The notes under the pieces are model-generated. The model had not been told where the DNA came from and made no database searches. It saw only the letters and a list, made by a program, of their open reading frames with translations. Positions 22,301-45,248 of a stretch of DNA of 45,789 nucleotides are shown piece by piece. Location: the NCBI GenBank assembly GCA_001642005.1, contig LWCA01000156.1, positions 1 through 45,789 of the forward strand, written 5' to 3'. This stretch comes from Intoshia linei (taxonomy: Eukaryota > Animalia > Orthonectida). Positions within the stretch are counted from its first letter, which is position 1. Each line of letters opens with the position of its first letter. Position numbers and translations under genes: made by a program.

Positions 22301-24121
22301 TTAAGATACAAGAATTATTTAGTGGGTTTAGCAAACAAAAAAGTACTACCTGATACTCTGAATATACCTATATTGGGAACGACAAGTATTTGGACACCAA
22401 ATTTAAAATACAACATGGAAATGTTACTATTTTGGGGTCCTAAATCAATTTTTTCCAACGGTTGGCAAATGCGCAACGAAATTAAATCACCAAATTTGAG
22501 GTTTCAGAATGCGGCTGAATTGGAAAGACAAATTTTGTTATTAGCTCTAATCAATATTCTTTTAATGCCATTTGTCTTTGTTTGGCAATGTCTTTACTCG
22601 TTCTTACGTTATGCAGAAACTATCAAGCGAGAACCTACATTTATTGCCGGCCGCAATTGGTCTATTTATTCCAGATTACATCTAAGACACTTTAATGAAC
22701 TCGACCATGAATTTAATGCCAGATTAAATCGTGCATACCATCTGAGTGTGCGATACATGTCAATGTTTAAAACTCTCATGTTTGTTGTTTTGTTTAAATA
22801 TATTGCATTTTTCTCTGGATCACTTTTATCCATTTTATTATTACTAACAATGTATGATAGTGATGTGCTCAACGTTGAAAATATTATTGGTGTCATGTCA
22901 TTGTTGGCCATAATAGCTTCCGTTAGCCGTGGAGCAATACCCAATGAATTTCAAATTTTCTGCCCAGAACTAACTATGCGAAGTATATTATCTCATGTTT
23001 CATATATCCCACAAAGATGGCGTGGACGAGCACATGATCTCAGAGTTAAATCTGAATTTTCATTATTATTTCAATTGAAAATTTTTAATTTGTTGGCACA
23101 GTTAGTAAGTCCACTTACTACACCTTTTATTCTTTTATTTTTGATTAGACCCCGTTCTCTAAAAATTATAGATTTTTTTAGAAATTATACAGATAACATT
23201 ATGGGTGTCGGCGATGTTTGCACTTTTTCAAAAATGTGTTTAAAATCAAACGGAGATAACGATTTCCATTCTAAAGAAGTAAATACGCAAAATACATTTA
23301 AAGCAAATGATGGTAAATTGGAACATTCTCTAGTACATTTCTCTTTGTCTAATCCTTTGTGGAAATCAAAACAATTGGAACATAGTTTCATTGTAAAGAC
23401 TAGAAACAATATGAAATCCATGATTTATGATTTACAAGTTGATCCAATGGATCAATCTGTGCTTAATATGATGAAAAAACCTCATGACTTTGATAAAAAT
23501 ATAGCATTTAATTACAGTCAAAATATGGCAAGTATGAGAAAGTCAAATACTAAATTTATTGGCGACTTGAAAGCATTGGATATTGATTATAATGATATTG
23601 ATTTAAATGAAGAATATGACGTAGATTTAAAAGTGGACCAAGATTTAATGTCAGCTTCTCTAAATTCTGATCTTTCCATTTTTAAACCAAACTCTGCTTT
23701 ATCGAAAAAGATGCCGTCTATAGGGTTTAAAAAAATTGAGCAGGATAAATTGATGCAAGAAAAATTAAAACAAGATAAAATTAAACTCGAAAAAATTGAA
23801 AAAGCAAAAGAGTTAAATTTTAATGTAACAAATATTGATGAATTGTCACCCGGTATGTTGGATATTGAAGAATTAAAATCTATCGGTTCTTCTAAAACAG
23901 CTTCAAAAAATTATGTTACAGCTTGTGAATCTGGTGATGAATCAATGGATAGTCAAATACACTTTAGTGTTTACAATAACTATGCAATTGATTTAATGTC
24001 CAATGATATGTGTCTCTCGTCCCTTTATTTGCATAATACAAGAGAAAAAAATAATTTTAAAACTAAAAACAAGAAAAAACCCAAAGATAAACCAACTGAG
24101 CATTTGGATGATGAAATTTAA
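19305..24121 (+). CDS. ATG9: Autophagy-related protein 9
   Basis: Exons 19305-19389, 21697-21811, 21872-22015 and 22051-24121. Motifs: IVHV..|ISNLDDFFRRVYHFHQKNGL, NCINYDILF, ELDVYMRILRYKNYLV, HFNELDHEFNARLNRAY, IIDFFRNYT..GVGDVCTFS, DGKLEHSLVHF. Confidence 0.97.
20095..20914 (+). mobile_element. Tc1/Tc3-like transposon relic (DD34E catalytic region and right end) in ATG9 intron 1
   Basis: Frameshifted FPDEKRFLLDGPDG..VVWAGIG..MQDNARPH..WPPYSPDCNPIENLW. The terminal direct repeats TTTT(C/T)ACATAGTTTTG lie near 20708 and 20891. Confidence 0.88.
21035..21655 (-). mobile_element. Non-autonomous Helitron, 5' portion with internal minisatellite
   Basis: The minus strand starts TCCTAACTTATATAATATGCTACGCG..TGTGTGTATGTGTC and is homologous to 34834-35217. 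It carries about three copies of a ~55-bp unit TTTTTAAATTCTC.AACTCGTTTGATTTTCAAAAA. Confidence 0.7.
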
Positions 24122-25191: not shown

Positions 25192-25334
25192 TATTAAGTA
25201 AATATTAATAACTTGCTTTTAACTAATTCTAATACATATGCCCATTTATAAAATTTTAAAATAAAAAAATAAATATTATTATTTATTAATAGTTTATGAT
25301 CTTAAATCACTTAAATTCTTCATGTTGAAATTAT

Positions 25335-28300
25335 TCATGGCTCTGGTATGGCTGTAAATAATTTACTAAAAAGAAATTCCATAAATCTTTTTGAATAATT
25401 ATTTGATTCATTGGTTGAATTAATTTTCTTATATATAAAATTTTAAAATGTATAAATTATCTACCTTCATGCAAAATAATTTTTTAATATTATTCCTGAA
25501 ATTTTTAACATTGGAGCATTGTTGTAATATATCGACAATTCCTGCATAAATATAAATTGGCCTATTTTCAATTAGTCCATAAATAGCTCCTTCCCTAGTG
25601 AAATGTGTTAATGTGATACAAAAATATTTTTTAACATAAATATGTAAATAACATCTAAGAAAATTTTTGTAAACGTTAAAAACCAAAAGTTGATTCAAAT
25701 TTCAAATTCGAATTGTAAAATTAATTTCAATTTTCTTAAAAATAATAGTATTAATGTAAATATAAATAATAATTTTAAGCAATAATAAATTTACTTACGG
25801 TATAATGAAATTTTTTGCATAATGTTTTTGTTGGATTTGGACGGCGCTCGCATAATAGTTATTTCTAGGAATTAGTGTATCTTGAGTTTGTAAAGATAAT
25901 GCTATGATTAGTACATGTAAAAAATTTAAATAATTGAATCACATTTTTTTACAATAATGGAATGTTTTTTTAATCGACTGAATTTAAAATGTATTGCGCT
26001 TTCAGATTGAATTGTATTATCTAAGAATATATATTAAACTAATTCTTTCATCAAATTACCTTGCTAAATAAATAATTGTATTGATAATCATTTTATATTC
26101 GTTTCGTAGTGTCCAAATAAAAATTAATGATGTAATTAATTAATTTATTTTAATATTTATTCATTTATTAAAATATAATTATATATTATTAAAAAATGGG
26201 ATAACAATTGTTTTTAAAATTCTTTACGCAAATGTTAAAAAACAAAAAATTAAGATGGAATAATTCACTTTAAAGTAAAAATAATGTGATATAATGGTTC
26301 CACCTGACACAAATTTGGGAACCACTCCTTTAAAGAATTGATAATAGTGAATAGTAGGATTCTTAAGTTAGATTTTCAACATGAATTATTTATTTGGTAT
26401 TATAAAAATGTGCCCTTTGCAGAGCTAGGTGCTGTTTGTACGTAATACATAACAGTCAACCTAGTATTAATATAATAAAAATATTACAATATTATCTTGT
26501 TTCAAAAAATAGATCGCAATTAAAAAACTATATTTTGTTATTTTCATGCTGTTCAATACCTATAAATATTAATGTGAATCAGAAAAATTTTTCATCAAGT
26601 GTAGTAATTATGATACTCGACAATCACGATAAATTCTATCCCTAATAGCATTCAAAATTTCCAATTCCAATTTTATATGATGCTTTATGATACGGATAAA
26701 ATCGTTGTCTTTGAATTCATAAATGTATGCTTCATCTGTTGGTACAATTCTATAATTTATATTATACATTTTATAACAGGGTCGGCAACCAGTCGCCCGT
26801 GGCCAAAAGTTGCTCACAGAATAATTTTGGTGGTCCTTTGAGTAAATATGAAAATTATTTATTTATTTTTTTTTTAAATTTTTCAACTTTTAAACACTTT
26901 TCTACAATAATTGGCTCATTATAATCATTTTAGCTTTGAATTTTCAGATTGTTTTGGATATTATTTTGTTAAATATACTAAAACCGTTTCTCTTCAGTTA
27001 AAATTGAAATCTATTATGTGTAAATTTTCAAAAACAGGGCTGTAGAATTTTCTGATAAAAAAAGTGACCTAAGAGACGCAAAAGGTTACCAACCCCTGTT
27101 TTATAATATTATGATTATATATTGTTTATTATTATATACTTATGATTATCAAGATACTATTAGAATAGTATTATTATTAGATTTACCTTCTTTCAATGCC
27201 ATTAAATTTAAATTGCATGTATTCCTCCTCTAATATGGGAGACACGCTATTACATACTAATATTCGTATTTTCTGATTATTGTACTAATCATATAAAAGT
27301 ATTAATATGTTTTGTTTTTTATTTATTTTAATCGTTAATGAATGACATAATATAAATATATTATAATATACTCATAATATTAATGTATTATTATAACAAT
27401 TATTGATGATAACCTTTAATGTATAGCATCCGTATAACTTTGGTAGAAAAGATCGAGGATGTTGTGCTTGATTCTATGATTATATTTTTACTTTATTTTA
27501 TATTTTATTATAATATTTTGATCGTGAAATGCACTTTTTTGAGACTACTATTGATGATGTTGCTTATGATTTTAAAAACTATCTCAGATTTTATGTTTTA
27601 TAAAATTCTAATAAAACTTTTTTTATTTAAAAAATGCAATTTTCGTAGGCTCAGATTTAAGGCAATATTAATGATTTTCAAACACTGTGCAGAAGTTGAT
27701 TTTTGAAATTCTAGGGCTGATTTTATTTTTTAAAAAAAGAGGTATTGTGTTTATAACTTTGAAAGACTCAATTTCTGTAAATCAAACTTGCATTATAACA
27801 TCACTCTCAAAAAGACCTCTTAGAAATTTGATTTTTGGTTAATTCTAGGACAGTTAATGTTAACTGTGTATAAACGGTAACACCCACAGTCATTAAATTT
27901 TATACATATCAACAATTAATTATATTTATAATTTAATAATATGATTTGAATTACCAAAAAGTATGATTTTAATAAGCATCGAAGAGTAGTTTTTTCGCGT
28001 TTAGACAATTCAACTATCATCATATGACGATCTTTAGTTTTCCACATGTAATTTTTAGTGTTTTTTTTTGGCAAATGAATACATTTGTGACAAACTGACT
28101 TCTAAATTTAAATACAGAAAGCTCTGATAGTGGCCAAATTTAAAATCCCAGTTCATTTTGTTAACATGTATCAAAAAAAGGTTAATACAATAAAATGAAA
28201 AACAATTACCATATATGTTTCATTAGATATGCCATACACTTTTCTAAAGAATTTAAAAACATTTGGTGAATGAACTTTAAATCGAAAATTTCTGATTTCT

Positions 28301-28589
28301 AAATCCATTTTATCAAAATGTAGTTTTGGTATGTTGATATATTTTACTAAATCAAAATCTCGATCTAATAAATCTTCATTGTCCATATATCTTTCGTTCA
28401 TAAAATAGTATTTTATTGACCCTTGAAGAAGTTGAATATTTGTTTCCGTCTTGTTTAAAATAGAATAAATTATAATATAAAATAAAATTTGATAATTAAT
28501 AATTTTAAAAATTATTAATCCATATAATTTTTTAATCACCGTGCATAGTACAAATTAGTAACTATTTTAAATATTACCTTATACGCCAT
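25335..28589 (-). CDS. PIP5K-family (phosphatidylinositol phosphate kinase fold) predicted pseudokinase, 12 exons, about 389 aa
   Basis: Exons 28589-28578, 28449-28210, 28101-27955, 27473-27414, 27284-27187, 26749-26617, 26559-26488, 26063-26060, 26020-25943, 25901-25799, 25594-25465 and 25427-25335 sum to 1170 nt, open. Retains FRFKVHSPNVFKFFR, SFLPKLYG, FKDNDF, RDCR, GIVDILQ and YSKRF. Lacks IIKT, DLKGS and MDYSL. Exon 1 and the microexon are inferred. Confidence 0.85.
26370..26464 (+). mobile_element. Helitron 3' terminus in an intron
   Basis: ...TGCCCTTTGCAGAGCTAGGTGCTGTTTGTACGTAATACATAACAGTCAACCTAG|T, homologous to the copies at 18793 and 34635. Confidence 0.7.
26777..27098. mobile_element. 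hAT (Buster/Charlie-like) MITE in an intron
   Basis: CAGGGTCGGCAACC... / ...GGTTACCAACCCCTG, with a perfect TSD TTTTATAA. Confidence 0.9.
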
Positions 28590-29199
28590 ATTTTCTACCT
28601 TTATTATCGACATTATAAATTAAAAATGATCTATTACATAAATGCAAATATTTTAACTGATAATGAAATTTTTCAAAGTTTAATCTAATATAATCTTATG
28701 CATGCAATGATCATATATTACATCTCTATCTTTCATCATACGACACTAACATTAAATAAGAAAAATAATGGAAAACAATGAATTGAATTAACGTTTGACA
28801 TGTCACGACTAGAAAAAAATAAATATAAATAAAAAAGTGTTAATTGAAAATATACAATTTAGAGTAGAATTAAATGTTATTCTATTGAAATATAAAATCT
28901 GTTTGATTTTGAAAAAAATTTATGATATAAATACAGGTTTAAAATCTGAATTATTTTTTAAATACGACACGTAATATATTATAATGAAAAATAAATATAC
29001 TGCATCATTTCCAGGTTTTTGACAAGTAAACAATGCTAATTAAACATTTATTGGACTTTTAATTTAAATTTAAGTAATTTTTATTTTTAATTAAATTTGA
29101 TAACATATTAATTAATAAAAATATTTGGTAACCCTTGTATTATTAACGTTATAACATTTTTAAACATTTTTGCGTTAAAATTAGAAATAATTCTTCTTT
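28590..29199. promoter_or_regulatory. Putative bidirectional promoter between the two PIP5K paralogs
   Basis: About 610 bp between the inferred divergent start codons (28589 and 29200). Position is the only evidence; no motif was identified. Confidence 0.45.
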
Positions 29200-32100
29200 A
29201 TGGAACATAAGCAAGTAATTTTATTTATAATATTTTCTTGTTCATTTTAAATTTTTTAATATATATTTCAGTGATACTTCTTATATACTGTTGACTCGTT
29301 TGCGTCGTACATCCTTATATTGAGATTAAAAATATATCTGAATCTCAGTTTCGTGTTTATTTCATACTAAGCTTCAATAGACGCATGCTATTGAACTAAT
29401 ATACTTAGTTCTCTATAAATTATCTACGATTTAATCATTGATAGTTTTTATCTACCTTTTCGACTTTGTAGACCTGAAATTATAGCTTTTATATTTTATT
29501 ATAACATGTTTTTTGATATTGTTATTTATAATATGTATATAATAATTATTATATACTGTTAAAAATCGTTTTTCATTTTTTTCGCGAAGTTGTGCTGCAT
29601 TTTTCCCCAACAGATAATTAATTTTTGTTTAAAAATATTAATTTATATTAATATTCCAGTTCATATACATTATAATTTACATAATTGGTATTATAATTTT
29701 AGTGATACATATATCACTATTGTAGTAATGTGAGATTCCAATATATATTATTAATATAACGTACTTGGTATGCTTACATATACTTTGACACTTATAATTC
29801 ACATCTTCAGATATATTATTATTATCATTGTTTGTATTTTAATCCTTTTTTAGGAAACGTTAAATAATCAAGTAGAATTGTTTCAATTATGCTTAAAAAA
29901 TTATTTAACGGCAGAATTAATGATTGAATTCAAACAAGATTTATTGGATGAAGATTTTAATTATAATAAATCCATAATAGAGCCGGTTTATCAAACAATG
30001 AACCCATTCAAACTCAAAATATTTCGTTTACAATTTAAAATATATACACCAAAAGTGTTTCAATATTTTCGAAAAATATTTAACATTTCAATTGAACAAT
30101 TTACCGTAATTATAACGTTTACTCTGGAATATTTTTTGATGTAACAAAATTTTGATTAGTTTTATGAAATTTAAATTAACTAGTTAAACCAGTGTTTCCT
30201 AAGCTTTTTATACTATTTCCCACTTTTGTGGTCTCACTCAAGCTGGCTACTGTTTGTATTATGTACAATTTAGACTAAATTTTAGTTAAAAATTTATTGT
30301 GCATAAAAGTTAAGCTAACGATTGTTGACATTAAAATTTTGAATTTTTTATAAATCCAATAAATTCGTTAAATTTCTCAAACAGCACCAAATTATCGTTA
30401 CGCCATCAAAAATTTCGTCAGGTCCCACTGTTAGGAAACACTGATTTAAATAAAATGTTTTGATCCTCTCATCCAATATTATGACCAATTTCTAAAACTA
30501 CTAAGTTCATATTCTGATTTTTAAGGCAGCATCATATTTTTAAAAATTGAAAAATGTATCCAATAAATGTTCATATAAATTTTTAGTCATTTTTGATAGA
30601 AGATTTTATTAATACCCTTTTTTAAACATTGATTATCCCACCATTGCAATACATCGTCATCATATAATGATCTTCAATTAGAAATCCATGTGTACTATGA
30701 ATTTTGACTTAATATACGGAAATAACAATAGTGGAGCTAGCTTATGGAAAAGTAAGGACTGTAATTATATTCTAAAAACTGTAACTCACAAAGAATATAA
30801 ATTTCTATGCCGTATACTCCGATCATATTTTTTGGTAACGTTATTAATAAAAATTTCGAATTTAAATTACGTATTAAGTTTTTAACGTTTTAAAATGAAA
30901 AATATGATATTAATGGAGGGGTTCCCACACTTTCTTACTCGCGGATTGGTAATTTACTCTAAAATTAAATTAAGAGACAAAATTTAAAAAAATACGATTA
31001 TATAAATTGGGCGTCTATTTAAATCTAATAATTTTTAAATGTTTTGAGTGGTTCTCCTCGCTTTGTAGGTATTTTCAATGACAAATCAAACACATCAAAT
31101 ATTTTTTTCTTATAAAACATTTTGCAGTTGCACATAATCGACTTATAATCAATACAGTCAAACCTCAATTGAACGAACAGCAACTTACATGAAAATTTAT
31201 TGTTCGATAAAAAAAAGTTAACGAAAAAACAAATTTACTTTTAATTAAAATATTTTTTTATAAAAAACACATATTGTTTTGGGTCTTTTTTTTAATATAC
31301 ATATTTATATATTAATGTCTCATCGCAATTATAAATGTCCATATGACTATATTTCTCTTCTTTACTTCTAAAAAAATGTGAAAAAGCTTCAAATTCACTT
31401 GTATTAACAAGACCTGCTTCATCACTAATAATAGGGGAACGACTATTACGACGTTTTTGAAAACAGGAAAATCAACCTTTCAATCTCTGAAATTAGGTTT
31501 TTTAGCGGTTTCCCGATTTTAAGAGCCATTGTTTGAATCATATTTTCTAAAATAATAAAATTTTTCGATCTCTTTCGAACAAACCACTCATATACTAATT
31601 TGTCGATTTTAGTGGTTGCAAAATTAACAAACATGTGTTTTTCCTCAATCCCATCTATTTTCATCTGTTTAAAAGAGTTTTTATTCTTTAAAATTTTATT
31701 AATCACACCAAGAGGCATGTCAAATTTAATTGAAAGTTCTCTTTGAGAATATTTTGCACTATTCATTTCAGAAAAATTTATAACCTCTATATTTTCTTCT
31801 AATGTATGAATTTTTTCATTTTCTCTTTGATTGTTTCTCTTTAGCATCGTATTAGATTTTTTATTGATTCTTAAAAAGAGATGTAATCGTAAAATATTAT
31901 TTACCTACAGTACTATTTATCTTGAAAAGTTTAGTTTAAGTTTTAATTTAATTTCAATATGAATTTTCATCAATTATTTTGGATTATTTGGAATATTCGC
32001 TAGACATCAGTCGATAAAAAGATACAATAATAGTATACCGTATGATTTTTTAAATCGTTCTAAAATAAAATAATCTTTTTTTAATTTTTGAAAAAGTTTG

Positions 32101-35100
32101 TTTATTAAAAAATAATTGCTGTTTGTTCGTTAATAAATTTAATTATTTATAGTACCAGTATAGTATACTGAGTATATCCATAAATTATTAATATTTTGTT
32201 TGTTCGTTAAATTGAGGTTTGACTGTATTTGGAATAAAAATTGTTGCAAATGCATACTTTTTCAGAAATTTTTTTAAATCAGAAATTATTTAGTTTTTAA
32301 ATACAGCACAATATAGTATTTCCTCTTGATCAGTCCCTTAAAGGTTGGTAAAAGTAAAATTATTCATTAAGCGTTTCTAAATTTGATTATTAGTAAAAAT
32401 GGTTGGATTTAAGAATTTTTTATATTAATCTAATAATTATAATTCTTATTGTATTTTTGATTGATCTACATAAAATATTTTCAAAAAAATTAAATTTTTC
32501 ACGTACCGTAAAATTATTTCACAGACGGCATGCGTAACTAAGGCTTAAAAAAACAAGATATCAATCATAAATTTTTCTAAAATGTAGATAAAATTTGGCC
32601 AAACCAAAAATTATTTTGTATTTAAACGGTAAACTTTTTAGGTTTAATCTAATCTTTAGAGGTTTATTATTAAAGTATGCTGAAGTTTTAAGTATATTAC
32701 TAAATAACTATTTTGTACTTTATTATTGTTTTCATTCCGATGGCTATTTTATAGCCAAACGAAACATCAATGCTGTTTCCATCCACAACCTTATGTAGTT
32801 TATTTAGAATCAAACCCAACACACACATACATTTTTACCAAGATTTTATGGATGTTACGCGTTAAAGGTTTAGATATTATATATTATATCAGGGTGATCG
32901 AAACACTTGGCGAGGGGGAACCAAAAAATTTACACAATTATTTCATCATTCCTTCCCTCTTAGTTTTTTACTTTTACTCCAATTTAAAATGCATTTTTTC
33001 CCCTTATATATATATTTTATATTCATATCACAAAGATTTATTAAGGTTTTATTAAAATTTTTTATTATTTACCTGTTAAAAAATATATTACTAAACAATT
33101 TCGCGGGCCACGCTTTGGACCGCCCTGTATTATATACATCAAACAGAAAGGCTCAGTAATACTAGGCATAGGTACAAAAAAAATAAAAACCATAACCCTA
33201 CAATGTATGTAGGGCCTACATACATTAAAATTTTAGCATTACTAATTTTGAAAGATTAAAAAATTGATATTACATAATTTGATATAATAAAATATAAAAT
33301 AAATCTTGAAATCAATCAAGAAAGAGGGAATTTACATTTTATTTTTATTTTTCAGTTCATTAATTAACTTTTGTATCTATAATTCATATATTGGTTCTGT
33401 TTGCAATACATTCAGATGTTTCAATTGAAACAAGACATAACTATAAAAGAAATATGTCGTATAGAATGTGTTAAACTGTGAAATGTACTGGTTCATTAAA
33501 TGTATTCATTCTACGGCTTGCCGTGGAATGTGTATATTTCACAGTTGTATACATTATATGCCACATACACATTACCAGGACCGTAGAGAGGGGAGCGAAG
33601 TATGAGCGGTAATTTTTTTTAAAATATAGGACTTTTTTTATTTTTAAACCAAAGGATAATGTGTGTTTTGATCGTATTGATATAAGTTTTTGAAACTGAA
33701 ATTTAAAATAATGATGATTATAAAATCTTTATTAGATTGTATATTTTTTATAATTCTAAGGCTCGTTTGATTTTTAAAGAAAAGGGTATAGGTTTTTTTT
33801 AACCTAGAAGTACTAAATTTTTGAAAACGACATTTACAATAAAATCTAATTAAAAATTATTATTATAAAGTGGTATTTTTAAAATTCTACACCTGTTACT
33901 TACTTTAATTAATTGGAATAGGCAAATAAACTAATATAATAATGTAAATAAACAAACATACATTCTAAACTAAATTATTTTAATATATTTAAAATAGGTT
34001 AATATATATGCTTTTATTATTAAATTTTAAAAGTCATCAGGAGTAACAGCAAATAGTAATAATAATAGTAATATCAGTAAATAGAATAAAATACAGACAA
34101 TTTTTTGTAAACTTAATATACGGATTCCCATTTTTTAAATAAATGTATTATCCATCTGCCTTATTAATAAACTATTAAAAATTTAAGTTTTCAGTAGTTA
34201 TTTAGAAGGATTTTAAATTTCATCTTTATTTAAAACCTATGTACATAAAATCGTAACTAATTTTGAAAAATGGTTATAAAATTTTTAGTTTTATATTTTA
34301 AATTAATGGCGAGTCATAGAATAAAATGTTAATATATCTATATAACAGTAATAATCATATGCCGAAATACAGAATTGGCTAATTATATAGTTGGCGAGTT
34401 GTGCAGAGAATATTGTACAAATAAACTAGAAAAATGAAAGATTTTTGAATTGAATAATCAATAAAAAATTGCTCTACTTATACAACGTAGTATTAAAGTG
34501 AAAAATATTTTAGTTCAACCACAACAGAAAACTTCGTTTAGTGTTGATGAACTGCATTATGCCTATTGAATCAAAGGCTAACTACACCTTTGATTTCAAA
34601 GGAAGCAACAGAGTGTAATATTATATAGTAATAACTAGCTTTAACCACTACAGTGTATTATGTACATTAACAAACAGCAGCTAGTTCTACCGAGGGCGGA
34701 AGTTTTAATTTTAAGACCGAGTTTTTAATTTATTATAGACCATGAATGTATGGTCTTAAAAAAATTTAAATTATAGTTAGAACCCTAAAAAATCTTCATT
34801 AGTAATGATTTTACAATCTGTATCATAGTGTTTATTTTTTTAAATTTAAATTTATGATAATGTTTATGATTTTAAAATCCGTATCAGCGTATATATTTTT
34901 TTAAATTCTCGAACTCGTTTGATTTTCAAAAAAAAGACAATTGGGATATATATTTTTTTAAATTCTCCAACTCGTTTGATTTTCAAAAAGAGGGACAATT
35001 TTTTAAATTCTCCAACTCAATTGATTTTCAAAAAAAGGCAATTGGGGTTTTTGACTGATAAGATGTGAGTTTGGGAGGTTGAAATTTATTTTGCGAACAC

Positions 35101-38100
35101 CCTCAGAAAAAACAGTACTTGAAATGTGGACTTTATAAAATTCTAAGACGGGTAGTTATTTAAAAAAAGTGGAACACACACAAACAAATATTGCGTAGCA
35201 TATTATATTAGTAAGGATATATTAAATTTTTTGTTTTAATAAAATAGTTACCAAATAAAAAAAAATTAATTCCAAAGTGCTTTTTTGACTGTGAATTGAT
35301 TAGTTAGTGAAATTAAAATTTGTGTGTGCTTTAATTTTTTTTAAATTCTAGTACTATTAACATTTTTTAAAAAAGAGTAATATGCTGTTTTGAAAATATC
35401 AAAATTAAAATTAATTAGTATTAATTTAGTATTAATAAAATTAAATAGATTATTATGAATATATATCCATAAAAATAATTTTTGAGCATTTGACCACTAT
35501 TCCCAAAAATTGTAGAAATTACCCAAAAAAGAAATTTTTTTATTTTGGTGGCTCAAGACTTATTTTCCGACATTCTATGTAAAAAAATAGATGAATCTGT
35601 ACAAAATTGAATAAAGAATAGTTAATTATTTACAAATAATAATTTTAAGCGATTTCGGGGTCGTAGTTTGCCAACCGCTGCCCAAATCACTGGGGCTAAT
35701 ATATATGATGAAAAATAGTGTTATCGAGGAAGATGCAGATAAAAATTTTTTAATTCTACTTTAATAATTTAATAAAAAATGATTAATATTAATTTAATTT
35801 ATATCATAGATCGGAAAGTACAATTCATGATGATACTCATGTTTATAAAGACAACGATTTTACAAATAAAATAAATAAAAAGATAAAATTTAATTCAAAC
35901 GTTTATGATGCCATAAAAGATAAAATTCGAAGAGATTGCAGGGTTTGATTTACAAATGTTGACAAAATTATTTAGGTACTTGAAAGTCTAAATATCATGG
36001 ATTATAGTCTATTAATTGGTTTATACTTTTTGGATAATAGATTTGAAATAAATAAATCCGTAAGTCTATTAATCTAGTCAGACTATAATATACACTCTAT
36101 GTGGATGAAACTCAATAATAAAATAGCTAAACTTTCTTTTTGGTTATTAACTGGGCAAGCAAAAAGTTGCTAAAAAACAACATTTAAACTCACAAAAACA
36201 ATCACGTACAGTCATGTAGTTTCAAAAAAATGGAAGTGGTGTATCAATGTTGAATTAATCTCCAGAAATCCAGAAAAGTGTTTATTATGCACAATAAATT
36301 TCGATAATATTTCATTTTATTTTATAGAAGTTATGAGACCGATTTGTAAATATAAAACTTGACTTTAAAAGATAATAAATCGCTAGAAATGAAATTGATA
36401 CGAAATTATATAAAATTTACAAAGTAATGTCGAAACACACTCTGGGCCGCTCTCAAATTATGATATAGTGAATATTATATTGATGAGAATTTTCACTTTT
36501 TTTGCATAAATTTAAAAATGCTGGAAATCGCCTTTCAGATACGTTATGAATTGAGTGAAATAAATATTTTTTGACGAATTTTTAGCATTTGCTTTAAATA
36601 AGTGGTTTTTAAACTTTTTTGTATAGCGCATCGCAAGTTTTTTATTACTTATTTCCAAATTCCAAAGGAAAACCTATCGAAAACTCTTTTCGCAGGCCTC
36701 GTTGAAAATTTTGAAAATGTTGCCATTCTTTTTTTAAATTTAGCATTAAAAAATATATTTTGAGTATCATAACTGTTTAAACTTTAAAAATAAAATTTAA
36801 ATCATCAAATTCAGATTCACATAGAGGCGGCTAGTGACTACATTTTTATATTTAATTTTTTAATTATACTAATTTAGGAAACTGGTATCTACTTCTATGA
36901 ATTATAATCTGACATAATTATATAGACAAACTGAAAATTTCATACTACAAATTGTCACATTATAAACAGTCATTTAAATTTTCTAAAAGTAATAAAATTA
37001 AAAATAATAGAATACATCGGGTGCACAAAGTGCGGAACTTTTTGTGAAACTGTTTTGTGAACCTTATAAAATACAAAAAAATGAAGAATTCTTAATTTTT
37101 GTAATCAAAAAGTCTGATAGAACAGTTGAATATATCAAATTACATATACACTGTATATATTTATATTTTAAAATTAATTAAAATTTAAAAACTTTCACAC
37201 CGTAACGCAATCTGTGCATCGCTGTATTTGATATGTAGAATAAAGTATTTTTTATTTTTATCATACACATATTTTATACGTATTATATGTATTATCAGGG
37301 CGTGGACAGAGTGGGCAAGGAGGGCCATATGGCAGGAGCCTACAATCATGAGCGCCTAATATTTTAATTTATTAATAGGTAAGGTTGGGATATTTCTTAA
37401 GTATGTCAAAATTATGATGACGAATGCGATTAAATACACTTATATTTTTAATTTTTAGGCCACAAACGCTTGATTAAACAATGTATAGACGTCTCAATTT
37501 AAAAAAATTATAGGGGCCCCACACTTTCTATATAGTCCGGGCCTACTGCTGGCTATCCACGGCCCTGTGTATTATATAAACTTTATACAATAATCTTTAT
37601 AATAAATATATAATTTTGAATATAGATGTAAATCCTCAGAATAATGAATATAGGCTTAGAAAGGATATACTGCCTTTCTGTATTAATCCAATAGAAAATA
37701 GTTTTAATGATGAAAAAATACCGTAAAATTATATGTTACCGTTCATACATATAAATATCCGTACATATATATAAATTATATGTCGGGCCGCATTTTTTTA
37801 AAAAATTTTTAGTCGAGATGCATCATTAAATTTTTTATAGCATAACATTCAAAAACCATTATACTATGAATCGAGATCATTTTATAATACACAGTGTGTA
37901 TTGAAAGTGATGTCAAATCAGATAATCGAAATTGAATATTTTTTTAGTTCGAGCGGCCATGGTTTTTTTAAATTTTTGAAAAATGTGAAAAATTGGTTCG
38001 GTCAGTTGTGATAATATTATTCAAAGGATAATCCAGATTATCATCGTCAATTACGGAGTAAACTTGGAGGGTCCTTTTTTCTTCATTATTTTGTGATAAT

Positions 38101-41100
38101 TTTATCTTAGAAATTAGAAGTGAAATATTTTTTTGTGTGTGGTTTTGTATCCATTGTGTAAGCTTGATTTTTTTAATTTACGTTATAATGATAAAACTAG
38201 AATTTTAATTTGATATGACTCGCAAGTATTTTTAAAAATTTAGACTTAATTGTTAATAATGATTTTAATGATATCATTAAATATGATCTTCTCGCAGTTT
38301 AGGTGTGCAAATGATGATAAACAATTCATTTTGGAATAATTAATAATATCTATATTATATATACAATATATTATACATATACTAAGTCGCGGCGGGCCGC
38401 AAGTTTGACACGGCTGATGTAAATGGTTTGCATACAATCACACAAAAAAATCAATTTTAAAAAATGAATGCTAATTGGTTACTAAAAACGAATTGGTAGT
38501 AACAATTTTTTATCATTCGATTTGTTACTGATGAGAGGTTAAGTTTTATTTTGAGGTTTTCCGGAGATTTAGGTAAAAATATTTTTTTTATTGTGGTTCA
38601 TCATAAGTATTTTTGATATCATTTTGATGGATTATGAATTGGTTTTAATAGTTTTTAAAAATGAATTATGGTCCATTATTAATTTACAAAAACTTCAAAT
38701 AGCGGTATCATATAAAATTTATATATATTTAAATATTGTATTGTATTATGTATTGTATACATGATAAAAACTAACATGATTATAATAATCGGTGCACCGT
38801 TTTTATCACGATTAATTTAATAAACTACGTTTTTATCACGATTTTCATTAAAATAAATAATATCGTATTAAATCTTTCATCAACTCATATAATGATTTAA
38901 ATGTACATTTAATAATTGATATTTTTAGTATTCTAGCTATGCTCGACTACTTTCCATTTATTTATATGTTTTAACAAAATTAATGAATTGCTCAAGCCAA
39001 GAATTTAAGCTGGGGATTAATCACGAAACTTGAGATGGAATATTAAATGGATTAGAGCAGCCATTCTCAACGGGGCCATATGGACCCCTTGGGGTCAACA
39101 TCACTTTGTTGGGGGTCCATGAAAATTATATACATTTATTACATATTATAGACATTTTCAGTTACATAAAGTCGTTTTTAAAACAAAGCCTCAGAAATAC
39201 TAATATAAAACGTGCAAATCATGTAAAAGTAAATTCATTGGTATTAAATTAAATTACTTACATGTGTAAAAATTAATTGGGAAACCTCCATTGTTCTATT
39301 TTAGGAGCAGCGGTTTTATTTAATTATTTTATTAAAATTTATGACTGAGCCAAGTTTCTAGTCATAAAAAAGCTTAAAATTTCAAATTGAAAATGGGACA
39401 AAAAATTAGTCAATATTCATGACTCTATGAAAAATCAACCAAGGGATATAAAATATTAATTTTTCACAGATAATATAGATACTATAGACTTTTATTTTTA
39501 TTTTTATTGATCTGATAAAATATGTAGTAAACAATTAATAATGTACTGTAAATAATATTTAAAAAACAAAATATAATAAAAATCTCAAATTAAAGTTATG
39601 AATATTTTTTTAATTATATACTTAATTATTAGAATTATAGTTACTTTCTAATCTAGAATAGTAATTAATAATTATTAATATTAATAAATATAATTAATGA
39701 ATTATGATAAATACATATGATTATGTATGTAAATATTTAAATAAATATAATTTTAATGTCATGACTAGGAATTATACTTTCCAACATCAACATTTTTCCC
39801 CCAAAATTGGGGTTAATTTCACATATATTGCTATGCCATCGATATAAATACTATAAAATTAACACAATTCTGAAAAAGTGCCCCAAAACACGAGTATGCC
39901 CCACACGGAGGTTTACCCCAAAGCGGGGTCGGACTGTATTATTAATTTTTTTGTGTCCACAGCGAAAAAGGGTTGAGAATGCCTGGATTAGAGGATGATC
40001 TTTTATGAGTCTATGGTTTTGTTGATTTGAAGATTTATTTTAATTGATTAATTATTCATCTTACTGTCTGGAAGCTCAATGGAAAATTCAAGGAAGAACA
40101 TGAGTTCCAACGTGGTATATACATTAAAGCAATAGCTGGTAAATCGCCTTACAAAAGATTGCATTATGAAATTAAAAAATTTCATATGAAAAGAATAATG
40201 TTGAATCACACAGAAATAATGAGGACCATACATGCTTTATCTTTAAATGTTCACTATTTTGCTATTTAATTTATTATTAAAATGTAATATCACAAAATTA
40301 TCCATTTAATTCTGTTATTTCTATTAATTTTTATTTTCAGTTTAATTAAAATCGTAATAAAAACGAACAGTGATAAAAAAGATCATGATAAAAACGAAAT
40401 TTATTAAATTAATCGTGATAAAATTGATTGACATGGAGGTTTTTTTGAAAATAAAGGAGTTGACGTTTTTGATTCGCCAGGAAATTCTCCAGACATGAAT
40501 GCAATTGAAAATATATGGGCGATATTGAAAGATGAAGTCTATACAATTCAAATTATTTTAAAATTTTTTATAATTCCAAGACTCGTTGAATTTTAAAAAA
40601 AGGATAATTGGGGTTTATGACCTTGGTGGACTCAATTTGTGAAAATAAAATTTGCGATAAAATCTAATCGACGACAAATTAGTATTATAAAGGATATGTT
40701 AAAACTATAAACCTATTACTTTCTTAAATACATATTATCAAATAAATAAAAGGATATTCATTTTTAACTAAATTACTTTATACAATGTATAAATATGTAA
40801 ATTATATATACGTATATGAATTTACATTCATGTTTATAAAGTTATAGAAACTGAATTATAATAAAGAGTAGAAAATATATTTCATGATTCACTATACGTT
40901 AACCTAGTTTAAAATAATTGCAGCGAGATTATAATTTTAACCTTTTTTTTTTTAAATGTCTTTTATAAATAATAATAATAGTACAACATTTATATTCCTA
41001 ATAAACTTTTAATAATATTAAATATATTATATCTAGGGAAGGTGCTATATGCGGTAAAATTAATGATAATCCCGTTTATATATACGCTGGTATTATCGAT

Positions 41101-41303
41101 ATTTTACAAGAATATGGAATTTTAAAAGAATTGGAACATATTCTGAAATCCTGTTGCACAAAGAAAGTAAATTATTTTAGAAATTACATAATTTAAACTA
41201 GGAAAACATTTCTGTATGCGATCCAGGTGTTTATTCCAAAAGATTTCAAGAATTTATTTTTACTAAAATATTTAGTTCAGATACATTTGCTAAAACACTC
41301 TAG
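29200..41303 (+). CDS. PIP5K-family kinase (type I-like PI4P 5-kinase), 12 exons, about 398 aa
   Basis: Exons 29200-29214, 29854-30105, 30682-30834, 32808-32867, 34514-34614, 35810-35942, 35976-36059, 36878-36884, 36926-36988, 37626-37722, 41037-41166 and 41202-41303 sum to 1197 nt, open. Motifs: FKIYTPKVFQYFR, SGAS..YILKTVTHKE, TFLPRFYG, LMN, DFKGS, KDNDF, IMDYSLLIG, GIIDILQEY..KELEH, ISVCDPGVYSKRF. Confidence 0.9.
30190..30443. mobile_element. hAT MITE
   Basis: 13-bp perfect TIR CAGTGTTTCCTAA/TTAGGAAACACTG and a degenerate TSD AGTTAAAC/ATTTAAAT. Confidence 0.8.
31155..32225 (-). mobile_element. pogo/Tigger element, internally deleted
   Basis: TIR CAGTCAAACCTCAATT(G/T)AACGAACA (24/25 match) flanked by TA. 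ORF 31847-31446 encodes psq/CENP-B HTH domains (SQRELSIKF, IDKLVYEWF) and frameshifts into ..DIYNCDET before truncation. Confidence 0.92.
32890..33127. mobile_element. hAT MITE
   Basis: CAGGGTGATCGAAAC... / ...CTTTGGACCGCCCTG, with a perfect TSD TATTATAT. Confidence 0.85.
33202..33226. repeat. Perfect 12-bp hairpin
   Basis: AATGTATGTAGG-G-CCTACATACATT. Confidence 0.6.
34635..35217 (-). mobile_element. Complete short non-autonomous Helitron (Lep1-like organisation)
   Basis: The minus strand reads A|TCCTTACTAATATAATATGCTACGCAATATTTGTTTGTGTGTG ... CTAG|T: TC start, CTAG end, AT target site, no TSD, internal minisatellite. Confidence 0.8.
37015..37224. mobile_element. Tc1/mariner-like MITE
   Basis: TA|CATCGGGTGCACAAAGTGCG ... 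CGCAATCTGTGCATCGCTG|TA, an imperfect TIR. Confidence 0.55.
37296..37567. mobile_element. hAT MITE (distinct TIR family)
   Basis: CAGGGCGTGGACAG... / ...CTATCCACGGCCCTG, with a perfect TSD TGTATTAT. Confidence 0.88.
38790..40425. mobile_element. Element with ~45-bp inverted subterminal repeats, hosting nested insertions
   Basis: TTTTATCACGATTAATTTAATAAACTACGTTTTTATCACGAT (~38801) is the inverted counterpart of ATCATGATAAAAACGAAATTTATTAAATTAATCGTGATAAAA (~40382). No TSD was found. Confidence 0.6.
39058..39985. mobile_element. hAT (Buster/Charlie-like) non-autonomous element
   Basis: CAGCCATTCTCAAC... / ...GTTGAGAATGCCTG, with a perfect TSD GATTAGAG. Contains a pogo-like right end (...CGGGGTCGGACTG|TA near 39936). 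Confidence 0.88.
40430..40545 (+). mobile_element. Tc1 transposase fragment
   Basis: FFENKGVDVFDSPGNSPDMNAIENIWAILK. Confidence 0.8.
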
Positions 41304-42247: not shown

Positions 42248-45200
42248 ATGATAGTTTTTCCTTCATATACTAAAATAAGATCAAGTAAAAAACTTCTTTT
42301 ATTTTACAAAATTGGAATATGTATCATGTCAGCCATCGCCAATGGTGTAATATGTGGATTTGTCAACTCTTATTCTTTATTATATATGGAATTAGGTAAA
42401 ATATTCCACGAAAACGCAAACGTTTCCACAATATCATGTAATTTCTTATTATTTAAGAGGTAAGACAAATGTAAATGTATTCAAATATAATAATTTATTG
42501 ATTGTAATGTTGCGACAACTGTGGTCTATAACAGTGGTTCCCAAATAGGGGCTTGGCCCCAACAGGAGGCCTACAGAGTCTGAGGGGGCCGCAGATTTAA
42601 GAAAAATTTTAAAATAGAATTAGAATCATTAACATTAATTTGATTTAGTATTTAATATTTAATTAATATATTCTTGAAATTCGGATTAATTTTGGATTAT
42701 AATAAATTTATGTTATGTTATTAACCCTGACGAGACAATAACACGTATATAAACAAAAACAAAAGTAACAATCATAATTTTACAATTGTTTGTATACTAG
42801 ACCCTAGTAACTAGGGTATCAACTATATTAAAGTATGATTTATAACGAAAATAAAACCAGTAATATTAATATTAAAAGATAACATTTTTTAAACGCTGTT
42901 ATAATAATATAATAAACATATTCACTATTTTGTACTAATTGATCTTCTCTAAAATTATTTTTATACTGTTAGGGGGGTCGACAATATATTTTTTTGGGAA
43001 CCACTGGTCTATAATACTTATTAATGATATTTATATATACAACTTTATACCTATAATATATTCATTAATAAGTATTAATTGAATTTGGGATCGTAAATAT
43101 GTGTCCTAAAAATGGTCAACGAGATGCAAAAGCTTACCGACCCCTGATCTATATCTAAAGTTGCTCATGAATCTCTTCATATCTGATAATAAATAATAAT
43201 AACAATTTGATTTATATTTTTTATACAAAAAATTTTTATAAAAAAAAATTAACATTTAATAAATTTTTTAATAACATTGATCTAAAGTTTTGAATCATGA
43301 TGGCATTGCATAATGGTAAATGTATTCCGTGCATTGTAAAATTGGAAATGAAATTCAAATGAATTATATTAAAGTCAATTCTACATATGTACAATGTACA
43401 TATAGATACTACAATATATAGATATCTGGAAGAATTTGCAATTACACTTTGAATTGAATTGAAAAATTTAATTAAAAAGTCAAGAGTTGTATAATTTAAA
43501 AAACCAAATCTAATAATTTTTCAAGTATAATGCAGTATCGCAAATTTCATTATCAGAAGATGAGCGTTTCAGGGTCAAATAATATAAACTTTAAATGAAG
43601 TCATAATGTAAACATGTTTATTATAATATTTAGCTTTAATTGGATCAATACAACTTGGAACATTATTTATCATGTCAGCTGTATCCAGTATGCTAATCAG
43701 TAAAATTGGTTTAAGGAAAACAGCAGGACTGGGAACTACAATCTGCATATGTGGTTGCATTATCAGTTATTTTTCATTAGGGAATATTTACGCCTTGATA
43801 TTTACATATGGAATAACAATAGGATTTGGTTCATCTCTCGTATATACAGCGTCTCTTTCAATATTATTTCAATATTTTGAAGAAAATGTTGGTCTAGCAA
43901 GTGGGATAGCCAATTTTGGTGGATCTGTTGCAACTGTACTGTTTCCATACTTTTTGGATAAATTTATAAAAATATATGGAATGTCAAAATTTATGTTGTT
44001 GGAAGCATTTTTATATTGCTTTTTATACATTGGACTATTCTTTTGGGTTGCAAAAGAATCAAGTAGTGAAATAGACGAAGTGAAAGGTGAAATAAAAATG
44101 GAGGATGATAAAATATCACAATCTAAATCAAAATCAAAGTTCAATAAAGCATACATTAAAAAAACTTTTGATATATTTTATAATTTTAATTACAGAGCAT
44201 GGAGCATTACTCTATCAATATTATTCATATCATATGCAGCTCCATTTTTATACTTGGTATATAATTTATAATTTATTTCCCAAGCACAGTCACTTGTCTA
44301 CTCATTACTAATTAAAGTAATAGTGGAATTTTAAGCACATGCATTTAAATTTCATAGACTATACTTTAGTGTTGTGTTCTTAGAAATAAAATTCCAACGA
44401 ATAAAAAAATTTTATGACCGTAAGGGGTCAGCGAAAATTTCCATTACATGGGGTTTGTATAATTGTGTTTAAACTTTGAGATAACATTACACTAACATTA
44501 TTAATACCATAAATGTTTCTGTAAAAAAATAGACATCAAAATACCCAATAAAATCATACTAGAAATTGAGAATTGTTACTGAAAACTATATTTACATAAT
44601 AATTACTATATAGTACTACAAATAATATTTTGAAAAATATAAAAAAAAGAAAAAAATTTTTAATTTAAAATTTTGTGGCCCACTTAAAAATGGACGTGGA
44701 CTACCAATCCAATGGTTTTTAATTTAAAACGCCATATAACCATTACTTTTATTTTAATATACTTTTACTTTTATTAGACAAAATATGCTGCTCAAAACGG
44801 TATGGAAAATAGTAGTATTATTATATCATTCCTTGGAGGAGGTTCAGCAGTCGGAAGATTGGTAATTGGAAAAATATCAGATCATAAATTAGTAGACAGA
44901 ATTGTATTGCATCAATTGTGTGCATTATTATACGGTCTTTGTATGTTTGTTATACCAATTATGATTAGTAATAGTATCATGCTATATGTAATGGCTATAT
45001 TTCTTGGAGTAGCTGATGGTTTACTGTTCAGCTTGATTGGACCAATATCAAAAGATATTTTGGGAAGTGAAAAGGCATCAAAAGGAATGGGATGCGCAAT
45101 GTCGTTATTAGCAGTTAATATAATATTTGGGCCCATACTCATGGGAATGCTTAAAGATTGTTTGAATAGATATGATATAATTTTTTATATTGCAGCAATA

Positions 45201-45248
45201 CCTCCCCTTATATCTGCATTTTCAATGTTAATAGCCCATAAAAAATAA
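42248..45248 (+). CDS. SLC16 (monocarboxylate transporter family) MFS protein, MCT10/MCT8-like; 3 exons
   Basis: Exons about 42248-42437, 43634-44256 and 44778-45248. Motifs: ANGVICGFVNS, KIGLRKTA, FTYGITIGFGSSLVYTASLSILFQYF..GLASGI, VGRLVIGKISD, GPILMGMLKD..YDIIFYIAAIPP. Confidence 0.9.
42532..43006. mobile_element. hAT (Buster/Charlie-like) MITE in intron 1 of the transporter gene
   Basis: 14-bp perfect TIR CAGTGGTTCCCAAA/TTTGGGAACCACTG and a perfect TSD GTCTATAA. Confidence 0.92.

What the first reader, a model, noticed from the sequence alone, without database searches (positions are those of the whole stretch)
25335..41303. Head-to-head PIP5K kinase and intact pseudokinase paralog: candidate lipid kinase/pseudokinase module
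Seen in the sequence: two divergently oriented 12-exon genes with matching intron positions and phases. Several exon lengths are identical (60, 133, 130 nt) and both spliced ORFs are open. Motif comparison, + copy vs - copy: G-loop GNNNSGASLW vs PKKNTKNYMW; ATP-binding Lys YILKTV vs MMIVEL; LMN vs VCN; DFKGS vs KFNGI; catalytic IMDYSL vs ITKYSF; activation loop QEYGILKELEH vs QQCSNVKNFRN. Structural motifs (FLPK/R.YGCY.LK, KDNDF, RDCR, YAGI.DILQ, YSKRF) are conserved in both. Established knowledge: the IIK Lys, DLKGS and the MDYS Asp are required for PIPK catalysis, PIPKs dimerise, and PIP5KL1 and PIP4Ks have non-catalytic regulatory roles. Inference: the - copy is a maintained catalytically dead protein, not a pseudogene. 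Both lost Asp residues became Lys, which could favour anionic-lipid binding, so it may act as a heterodimer regulator or phosphoinositide sensor for its neighbour. I cannot verify novelty without a literature search.
Basis: partly seen in the sequence, partly recalled or inferred. Interest (0 to 1): 0.88.

Follow-up and report, generated by a model that had tools for sequence, protein, structure and literature searches.

The report
Dead PIP5K paralog beside live sister
In the parasite Intoshia linei two head-to-head copies of a lipid kinase gene (type I PIP5K) sit 0.6 kb apart; one keeps every catalytic residue, while the other has lost four of five yet stays an intact, still-constrained gene. 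This is a lineage-specific analogue of the vertebrate pseudokinase PIP5KL1, and its expression and function are untested.

Summary
Window 25335-28613 (-) and 29200-41303 (+) carry two 12-exon genes. All splice sites are GT-AG, the intron phases are identical, three exon lengths match (60, 133, 130 nt), and the frames are open (397 and 398 aa, 37% identical).

The genome is Intoshia linei. The - copy is annotated as A3Q56_01914, but that model skips the end of exon 6, exon 7 and a 4-nt micro-exon. I found no annotated protein for the + copy.

Both copies are type I PIP5K-like and group together (98/97), apart from the canonical I. linei PIP5K1 on other contigs. The + copy keeps the IIK Lys, DLKGS, MDYS Asp, IID Asp and the activation-loop Glu. 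The - copy has V, K.N.I, K and R there and keeps only the IID Asp.

The - copy is not decaying:
- Synonymous sites between the copies are saturated, yet it has no stop and no broken splice site.
- Its losses concentrate in catalytic motifs (Fisher p = 5e-4).
- It keeps 72% of conserved residues elsewhere, including dimer-interface residues.

The heterodimer or lipid-sensor role is inference only. I rate it a new member of a known kind (PIP5KL1/PIPKH-like), of moderate interest.

The parts
28578..28613 (-). - copy exon 1 (MSIIKVENMAYK), the start as in annotated protein P0001
   Evidence: donor gtaatatt
28210..28449 (-). - copy exon 2 (240 nt); N-terminal region holding the Asp equivalent to zebrafish PIP5K1A dimer-interface Asp-84
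27955..28101 (-). - copy exon 3 (147 nt): degenerate G-loop PKKNTKNYMW; IIK Lys replaced (MMIVEL, V122); dimer helix KSYFL
27414..27473 (-). - copy exon 4 (60 nt), FLPKLYGCYTLK
27187..27284 (-). - copy exon 5 (98 nt): LVCNS and KFNGI in place of VIMNN and DLKGS (D->K187, K->N189, S->I191)
26617..26749 (-). - copy exon 6 (133 nt): KDNDF ... RDCR, holding the Arg equivalent to dimer-interface Arg-287
   Evidence: PMC4570271
26488..26559 (-). - copy exon 7 (72 nt): ITKYSF in place of IMDYSL (catalytic Asp -> K247); skipped in the deposited annotation
26060..26063 (-). - copy exon 8: inferred 4-nt micro-exon CAAG (ttatttatttag|CAAG|gtaattt), needed for the frame
25943..26020 (-). - copy exon 9 (78 nt), variable insert
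25799..25901 (-). - copy exon 10 (103 nt), variable insert
25465..25594 (-). - copy exon 11 (130 nt): YAGIVDILQ (IID Asp kept, D345) and a degenerate activation loop QQCSNVKNFRN
25335..25427 (-). - copy exon 12 (93 nt with the stop), YSKRFMEF
28614..29199 (.). 586-bp region between the two start codons (18% GC); a possible shared bidirectional promoter (inference)
29200..29214 (+). + copy exon 1 (MEHKQ, 15 nt), tentative
29854..30105 (+). + copy exon 2 (252 nt)
30682..30834 (+). + copy exon 3 (153 nt, same length as in the canonical I. linei PIP5K1): G-loop NNSGASLW and ILKTV Lys (K121)
32808..32867 (+). + copy exon 4 (60 nt), FLPRFYGCYALK
34514..34614 (+). + copy exon 5 (101 nt): VLMNC and FDFKGS
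35810..35942 (+). + copy exon 6 (133 nt): KDNDF ... RRDCR
35976..36059 (+). + copy exon 7 (84 nt): IMDYSLL (D247)
36878..36884 (+). + copy exon 8: inferred 7-nt micro-exon GAAACTG
36926..36988 (+). + copy exon 9 (63 nt), variable insert
37626..37722 (+). + copy exon 10 (97 nt), variable insert
41037..41166 (+). + copy exon 11 (130 nt): YAGIIDILQEYGILKELEH, a type I activation loop with the Glu kept
41202..41303 (+). + copy exon 12 (102 nt with the stop), ISVCDPGVYSKRFQEF
26181..26487 (.). High-copy ~300-bp dispersed repeat inside intron 7 of the - copy, ending within about 10 nt of the exon 7 donor; used as a neutral yardstick

Best explanation
An old inverted tandem duplication of an already divergent type I PIP5K gene in the orthonectid lineage produced two genes of kinase-core size that share a 0.6-kb 5' region. 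The + copy keeps all residues needed for ATP binding, catalysis and PI4P specificity, so it is predicted to be an active PI4P 5-kinase. The - copy (A3Q56_01914) has lost the G-loop, the IIK Lys, the DLKGS Asp and Lys, the MDYS catalytic Asp and the activation-loop Glu. It keeps the PIPK fold, the IID Asp, the side-by-side dimer-interface residues and an intact 12-exon frame under purifying selection. It is therefore a lipid-kinase pseudokinase, not a pseudogene.

Shown: the gene structures, the residue losses, the sister relationship and the signs of constraint.

Inferred: that it is expressed, and that it acts without catalysis, most likely like vertebrate PIPKH/PIP5KL1, by pairing with an active PIP5K (its neighbour or the canonical PIP5K1) and changing that kinase's membrane targeting or activity. 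Its higher positive charge would favour acidic membranes.

My confidence that it is a maintained dead-kinase gene is about 0.7. My confidence in the heterodimer-regulator mechanism specifically is about 0.35.
For: Family and type:
- P0001 (the annotated - copy) scores 67.8 bits against Pfam PF01504, cut-off 27.
- It aligns end to end with zebrafish PIP5K1A at E = 2e-26, against 1.6e-8 for the best type II hit, PIP4K2B.
- + copy exons hit PF01504, and PIP5K is the only kinase family they hit in the PDB (type I).

Gene structure:
- Both genes have 12 exons, GT-AG introns, identical phases and open frames.
- Exon boundaries are shared with the canonical I. linei PIP5K1 on C1310/C1561, including a 153-nt and a 60-nt exon and the DCR|VL junction.

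Residues (numbering from PMC4570271):
- K171->V (AAA->GTT), D236->K, K238->N, D299->K and the activation-loop E->R in the - copy; D378 is kept.
- All of these residues are kept in the + copy.

Constraint on the - copy:
- dS between the copies is saturated (NG86 1.49, ML about 13) with dN about 0.6.
- In a neutral simulation the frame plus splice sites survive 5% divergence with P about 5e-4.
- A repeat in intron 7 is at most 92% identical to its roughly 2800 relatives.
- At sites where the + copy and the canonical gene agree, the - copy differs at 20 of 31 motif sites but only 23 of 83 elsewhere (Fisher p = 4.7e-4).
- The relative-rate excess is modest (43 vs 27, p = 0.07).
- Exons are richer in GC than introns (0.27 vs 0.21).

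Sister relationship: the clade (+,-) has 98/97 support, and one search finds only the + copy as a relative.

Capacity to dimerise and bind membranes:
- The equivalents of Asp-84, Phe-189 and Arg-287 are kept in both copies (PMC4570271).
- Net charge is +26 for the - copy, +13 for the + copy, and +3 for the incomplete (313-aa) canonical core; over the 302 columns shared by all three it is +20, +12 and +3.

Precedent: PIPKH/PIP5KL1 binds PIP5K alpha and beta and relocates them (PMC6794296).
Against:
- No ortholog of the - copy was found in any other data set, so there is no lineage-specific dN/dS.
- The deposited annotation splices out RDCR, exon 7 and exon 8. My model needs unverified 4-nt and 7-nt micro-exons.
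- A repeat sits within about 10 nt of the exon 7 donor.
- The tree has only six rows with long branches, so long-branch attraction could inflate the sister grouping.
- Dimer-interface Pro-186 is Arg or Lys in both copies.
- Head-to-head neighbours are common in compact genomes and do not show an interaction.
Confidence: 0.6

Rival explanations
1. The - copy is a recently inactivated unprocessed pseudogene that has not yet collected stops. The catalytic losses are simply the first damage.
For: No RNA evidence exists. The - branch is 2.3 times longer than the + branch. A repeat sits next to the exon 7 donor. No orthologs were found.
Against: At least ten motif residues are replaced, several through 2-3 nucleotide changes per codon, which takes a long time. 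Over that time a neutral gene would not keep 397 codons and 22 splice sites open: P about 5e-4 at 5% divergence. Losses concentrate in catalytic motifs while 72% of conserved residues elsewhere are kept. The relative-rate excess is small.
Confidence: 0.12
2. The real product of the - copy is the annotated isoform (P0001). It skips RDCR, exon 7 and the micro-exon, giving a protein without the catalytic-loop segment.
For: The deposited model A3Q56_01914 is in frame using GTGATT donors. It needs no 4-nt exon.
Against: The skipped exon 7 is open and aligns with the + copy (VLNSMKITKYSFLIAIYFL vs VLESLNIMDYSLLIGLYFL). The DCR|VL junction is shared with the + copy and with the canonical gene. Both copies independently need a 3n+1 exon about 40 nt upstream of exon 9, and each has a well-signalled candidate there. 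Gene predictors cannot place 4-nt exons.
Confidence: 0.15
3. The - copy is non-catalytic but does not work with its neighbour. It acts alone as a phosphoinositide or acidic-membrane binding protein or scaffold, or it partners only the canonical PIP5K1.
For: It is strongly basic (net +26, pI 9.6). Both lost Asp residues are now Lys. The activation loop, which acts as a membrane sensor in PIP5Ks, is remodelled.
Against: No data favour this over pairing with the + copy. The dimer-interface residues are kept, and the (R/K)SYFL helix variant is shared specifically with the + copy.
Confidence: 0.2
4. The - copy is still a kinase that uses a non-canonical active site, for example a Lys relocated into the Lys-rich G-loop KKNTK, as in WNK kinases.
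For: The IID (DFG-like) Asp is retained, and the G-loop gained three Lys.
Against: The catalytic-base Asp (MDYS), the DLKGS Asp and Lys, and the glycine and serine of the G-loop are all gone at once. No PIPK is known to me to work without them (my own knowledge).
Confidence: 0.04

Closest known systems
PIP5KL1 / PIPKH (vertebrate PIP5K-like pseudokinase)
   Same: It is a protein of kinase-core size related to type I PIP5K, regarded as a pseudokinase. It binds active PIP5K alpha and beta and relocates them and PI(4,5)P2 (PMC6794296, PMC10916875). This is the same functional idea proposed here.
   Different: Orthology was not tested because no PIP5KL1 sequence was reachable. Here the dead copy is the sister of a motif-intact neighbour in a head-to-head pair, apparently a separate duplication within the orthonectid lineage.
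Canonical type I PIP5K (zebrafish PIP5K1A, PDB 4TZ7; I. linei PIP5K1 on C1310/C1561)
   Same: Same fold and family. Exon boundaries are shared. The dimer-interface Asp-84, Phe-189 and Arg-287 equivalents are kept. The + copy keeps Lys-171, Asp-236, Lys-238, Asp-299, Asp-378 and the activation-loop Glu.
   Different: Both copies are only the kinase core (about 398 aa) and share just 33-37% identity with the canonical gene. The - copy lacks four of the five catalytic positions.
Type II PIP4Ks acting without catalysis (PIP4K2C and others)
   Same: These are PIPK-family proteins with little or no activity that regulate PIP5Ks through binding.
   Different: The pair is type I by sequence. The I. 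linei type II gene is a separate locus, C2299. Type II kinases dimerise head to head through different residues (PMC4570271).
Protein kinase / pseudokinase pairs in general (JAK JH2-JH1, STRAD-LKB1, HER3-HER2)
   Same: A dead paralog regulates a live one through dimer contacts (my own knowledge).
   Different: Those are protein kinases. Here it is a lipid kinase pair encoded by two adjacent genes.

Membership tests
Pfam PIP5K (PF01504) phosphatidylinositol phosphate kinase family | Score above the curated cut-off (27 bits) | tested here: met
   The - copy as P0001 scores 67.8 bits. Single exons of the + copy score 34.7, 30.6 and 29.5 bits in six-frame search. Single exons of the - copy do not reach the cut-off on their own.
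Type I PIP5K subfamily | Closer to type I than to type II in sequence | tested here: met
   P0001 scores 96 bits against PIP5K1A and 37 bits against PIP4K2B. + copy exons 3 and 11 hit PIP5K1A and no type II PIP4K.
Type I PIP5K subfamily | Activation loop KK(L/I)EH with the specificity Glu | tested here: inconclusive
   The + copy has LKELEH (met). The - copy has VKNFRN, with Glu replaced by Arg (not met).
Type I PIP5K subfamily | Side-by-side dimer interface (Asp-84 / Arg-287 ion pair; Pro-186, Phe-189, Met-190 on helix alpha4b; PMC4570271) | tested here: met
   The Asp, Arg and Phe are kept in both copies. Met is replaced by Leu and Pro by Arg or Lys in both. This is a sequence-level check only.
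Catalytically competent PIPK | IIK Lys-171, MDYS Asp-299, IID Asp-378, DLKGS Asp-236 and Lys-238 (PMC4570271) | tested here: not met
   The - copy has V122, K247, D345 (kept), K187 and N189. The + copy has all five. The - copy therefore fails and the + copy passes.
PIP5KL1 / PIPKH orthogroup | Groups with PIP5KL1 in a PIPK phylogeny | not testable with these tools
   No PIP5KL1 sequence could be fetched. The word-indexed search found only the query itself. The tree has no PIP5KL1 row.
Unprocessed pseudogene | Stop codons, frameshifts or broken splice sites; uniform loss of conservation | tested here: not met
   There are no stops, all 22 splice sites are intact, and conservation is non-uniform.
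Expressed gene | Spliced transcripts | not testable with these tools
Only one run of unknown kind holds 22% of the words.

The most novel reading that the evidence does not exclude
Orthonectids evolved their own PIP5K pseudokinase, independently of vertebrate PIP5KL1. It is co-expressed from a shared bidirectional promoter with its active sister and works as an obligate kinase/pseudokinase heterodimer that sets where PI(4,5)P2 is made in this extremely reduced animal. That would be a case of convergent evolution of lipid-kinase regulation by a dead paralog.
Probability: 0.22. Interest if true: 0.55.

Novelty: new member of a known kind. Interest (0 to 1): 0.38.

Why it matters
Pseudokinase partners are well studied for protein kinases but barely for lipid kinases. 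PIP5KL1/PIPKH is the one described case I found in the PIP5K family, and its mechanism is still unclear. A second, probably independent, natural dead-PIP5K next to its live sister gives a clean comparison pair: same size, same exon structure, and differences concentrated in the active site. That would help in asking what a PIPK fold does when it cannot phosphorylate.

It also corrects the annotation of the I. linei genome. The model for A3Q56_01914 is mis-spliced, I found no annotated protein for the sister gene, and frame-essential 4-nt and 7-nt micro-exons are needed in both. The finding concerns one gene pair in one obscure parasite and has no expression data, so its reach is limited.

Tried and rejected
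- Ortholog searches. The profile of exon 2 against 1.84 billion representatives gave only P0001 plus five canonical type I fragments. The word-indexed searches with P0001 and with exon 2 found nothing else. No dN/dS on the - lineage was therefore possible.
- An alignment of P0001 with the + copy exons as separate rows (A2) was badly misaligned and was not used as a query.
- The candidate exon EWFPNLCQ in intron 7 of the - copy is rejected because it lies in a high-copy repeat.
- Literature searches for the phylogenetic range of PIP5KL1 found nothing usable.
- Joined (spliced) protein models were built and compared only in local scripts. No database search, structure prediction or complex prediction was run on a joined model. 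A homodimer test of P0001 was not run because that model lacks the Arg-287 segment.
- Pairwise dN/dS is of little use because dS is saturated: omega is 0.39 by NG86 and 0.05 by ML.


Full report
**What the window is.** The window is contig C1194 of a 41.6-Mb, 25% GC assembly. The annotated protein recovered from it is "hypothetical protein A3Q56_01914 [Intoshia linei]", so the genome is the orthonectid Intoshia linei, as earlier notes of the scan also say. Neighbouring genes are ATG9 (22052-24121, +) and an MFS transporter (from about 43.6 kb, +).

**The observation.** I rebuilt both genes from the sequence, using reading frames, splice signals and the similarity between the two copies. The - copy runs from 28613 to 25335 and the + copy from 29200 to 41303.
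- Each has 12 exons, and all 22 introns are GT-AG.
- The phase series is identical (0,0,0,0,2,0,0,1,1,2,0).
- Exons 4, 6 and 11 are 60, 133 and 130 nt in both.
- Both CDS are open (397 and 398 aa) and 37% identical.

Exon 8 is a micro-exon (CAAG at 26063-26060; GAAACTG at 36878-36884). In both genes exon 7 ends in phase 0 and exon 9 starts in phase 1, so a 3n+1 exon is required. Each gene has a well-signalled candidate 39-41 nt upstream of exon 9. Exon 1 of the + copy (MEHKQ) is tentative.

**Annotation.**
- A profile of the exon 2 pair, searched against 1.84 billion representatives, returned P0001 (368 aa). This is the deposited model of the - copy.
- P0001 matches my model except that it leaves exon 6 early at a GTGATT donor and joins exon 9 directly. 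It therefore omits RDCR, exon 7 and exon 8. I consider this a predictor's way around a 4-nt exon.
- The reasons are that the skipped exon 7 is open and similar to that of the + copy, and that the DCR|VL junction is shared with the + copy and with the canonical gene.
- No annotated protein containing + copy exon 2 exists in the library.

**Family.**
- P0001 passes Pfam PIP5K with 67.8 bits.
- It aligns over the whole kinase core of zebrafish PIP5K1A (E = 2e-26), far better than with type II kinases (best E = 1.6e-8, PIP4K2B).
- Exons of the + copy hit PF01504 in six-frame search, and the only kinase family they hit in the PDB is type I PIP5K.
- The Atlas model of P0001 superposes on PIP5K clusters with TM 0.85.

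**The other PIPK genes of the genome.**
- The canonical PIP5K1 is split over C1310 and C1561. It has perfect motifs: NPGASGSVFF, FVIKTV, FDLKGS, IMDYSLLLGIH, GLIDILQNYRASKKLEH.
- A type II PIP4K lies on C2299 and a PIKfyve on C1773.
- The canonical gene shares exon boundaries with the pair: a 153-nt G-loop exon, a 60-nt exon, a phase-2 junction after DLKGS, and DCR|VL. The pair therefore arose by DNA-level duplication of a type I gene.

**Relationship of the two copies.**
- In the genome, P0001 finds only the + copy as a relative.
- In a three-way alignment the copies share 54 states not found in the canonical gene, against 43 and 27 for the other two pairings.
- In a six-row ML tree they form a clade with 98/97 support on a long stem. 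Terminal branches are 1.49 (-) and 0.64 (+).
- The sample is small and the branches are long, so this fits, but does not prove, a lineage-specific tandem inversion-duplication. PIP5KL1 could not be included.

**Catalytic residues.** Numbering is that of zebrafish PIP5K1A (PMC4570271), checked against the alignment index.

| Position | + copy | - copy |
|---|---|---|
| Lys-171 (IIK) | K121 | V122 (AAA->GTT) |
| Asp-236 / Lys-238 / Ser (DLKGS) | D, K, S | K187, N189, I191 |
| Asp-299 (MDYS) | D247 | K247 |
| Asp-378 (IID) | D343 | D345 (kept) |
| Activation-loop Glu | E355 | R357 |
| G-loop (canonical GASGS) | NNSGA | KNTKN |

The + copy is predicted active and the - copy predicted dead.

**Is the - copy a decaying pseudogene?** Several in-genome tests say no.
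- Synonymous sites between the copies are saturated (NG86 dS 1.49, ML about 13) with dN about 0.6. The duplication is therefore old.
- In a neutral, AT-biased simulation the frame stays open in 0.6% of trials at 5% divergence. Adding the splice dinucleotides and the ATG brings this to about 5e-4.
- A ~300-bp repeat inside intron 7 is at most 92% identical to any of its roughly 2800 relatives. This gives a rough neutral yardstick of several percent since its insertion.
- At sites where the + copy and the canonical gene agree, the - copy differs at 20 of 31 sites inside the ATP, catalytic and activation-loop motifs, but at only 23 of 83 outside them (Fisher p = 4.7e-4).
- The overall relative-rate excess of the - copy is modest (43 vs 27, p = 0.07).
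- Exons are richer in GC than introns (0.27 vs 0.21).

A very recent death, within less than about 2% neutral divergence, cannot be excluded.

**Hints about function.**
- The ion pair Asp-84 / Arg-287 and Phe-189 of the side-by-side PIP5K1A dimer (PMC4570271) are kept in both copies. Both share the helix variant (R/K)SYFL in place of PGYFM.
- The - copy is the most basic of the three proteins. Over the 302 columns shared by all three the net charge is +20 for the - copy, +12 for the + copy and +3 for the canonical core; over the full models it is +26 (397 aa) and +13 (398 aa).
- The start codons are 586 bp apart.
- The closest precedent is PIPKH/PIP5KL1, viewed as a pseudokinase that binds PIP5K alpha and beta and relocates them and PI(4,5)P2 (PMC6794296; also PMC10916875).

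From this I infer a non-catalytic partner or regulator role. That inference is not tested.

**Limits.**
- No ortholog was found elsewhere.
- The joined spliced proteins were used only in local scripts. Database searches were done exon by exon or with P0001, and the joined steps (structure, complex and library searches of the full models) were left out.

**Verdict.** The reading "maintained dead kinase, not a pseudogene" is well supported within the limits of a single genome. The heterodimer or sensor role remains a reasonable hypothesis. This is a new member of a known kind (a PIP5K-family pseudokinase) and of moderate interest.

Noticed in passing
window 26060-26063 and 36878-36884: Frame-essential micro-exons of 4 nt and 7 nt sit at the same place in both paralogs, each followed by a 39-41 nt intron. 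The deposited annotation of the - copy works around the 4-nt exon and so loses 29 residues.
   Followed up: partly
window 26181-26487: A ~300-bp dispersed repeat with about 2800 first-look candidates in the genome (89-92% identical among the 39 other copies scored) lies in intron 7 of the - copy and ends within about 10 nt of the exon 7 donor.
   Followed up: yes
window 27021-27106, 27516-27812, 33609-33912, 34835-35393, 40563-40663: Further short dispersed repeats in introns of both genes are shared with contigs C1310, C1561, C2299 and C1773. They account for part of the large size of the + copy's introns (12 kb gene against 3.3 kb).
   Followed up: partly
window 31446-31847 (-) and 40432-40593 (+): Transposase remnants lie inside + copy introns: a Tc5/pogo-type HTH ORF (E = 0.0017) and a DDE_3 fragment (E = 4e-4). 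Both score below Pfam's cut-offs.
   Followed up: partly
window 22052-24121 (+): A 689-aa single-ORF ATG9 gene (Pfam ATG9, E = 2.7e-118) lies about 1.2 kb beyond the 3' end of the - copy. MFS transporter pieces lie at 43672-44271 and 44802-45248.
   Followed up: no
G000:C1310:1-3930 (-) and G000:C1561:4760-6292 (-): The canonical I. linei PIP5K1 gene is split between two contigs (N-terminal part to MDYSLL on C1310, activation loop and C-terminus on C1561). It may therefore be incomplete in the annotation.
   Followed up: partly
window 25200-31100: The only public run found (X1, kind unknown, 2024) holds 22% of the 31-mers. By my count, exons alone would give about 20.5%, but DNA about 5% diverged would give a similar share.
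   Followed up: no
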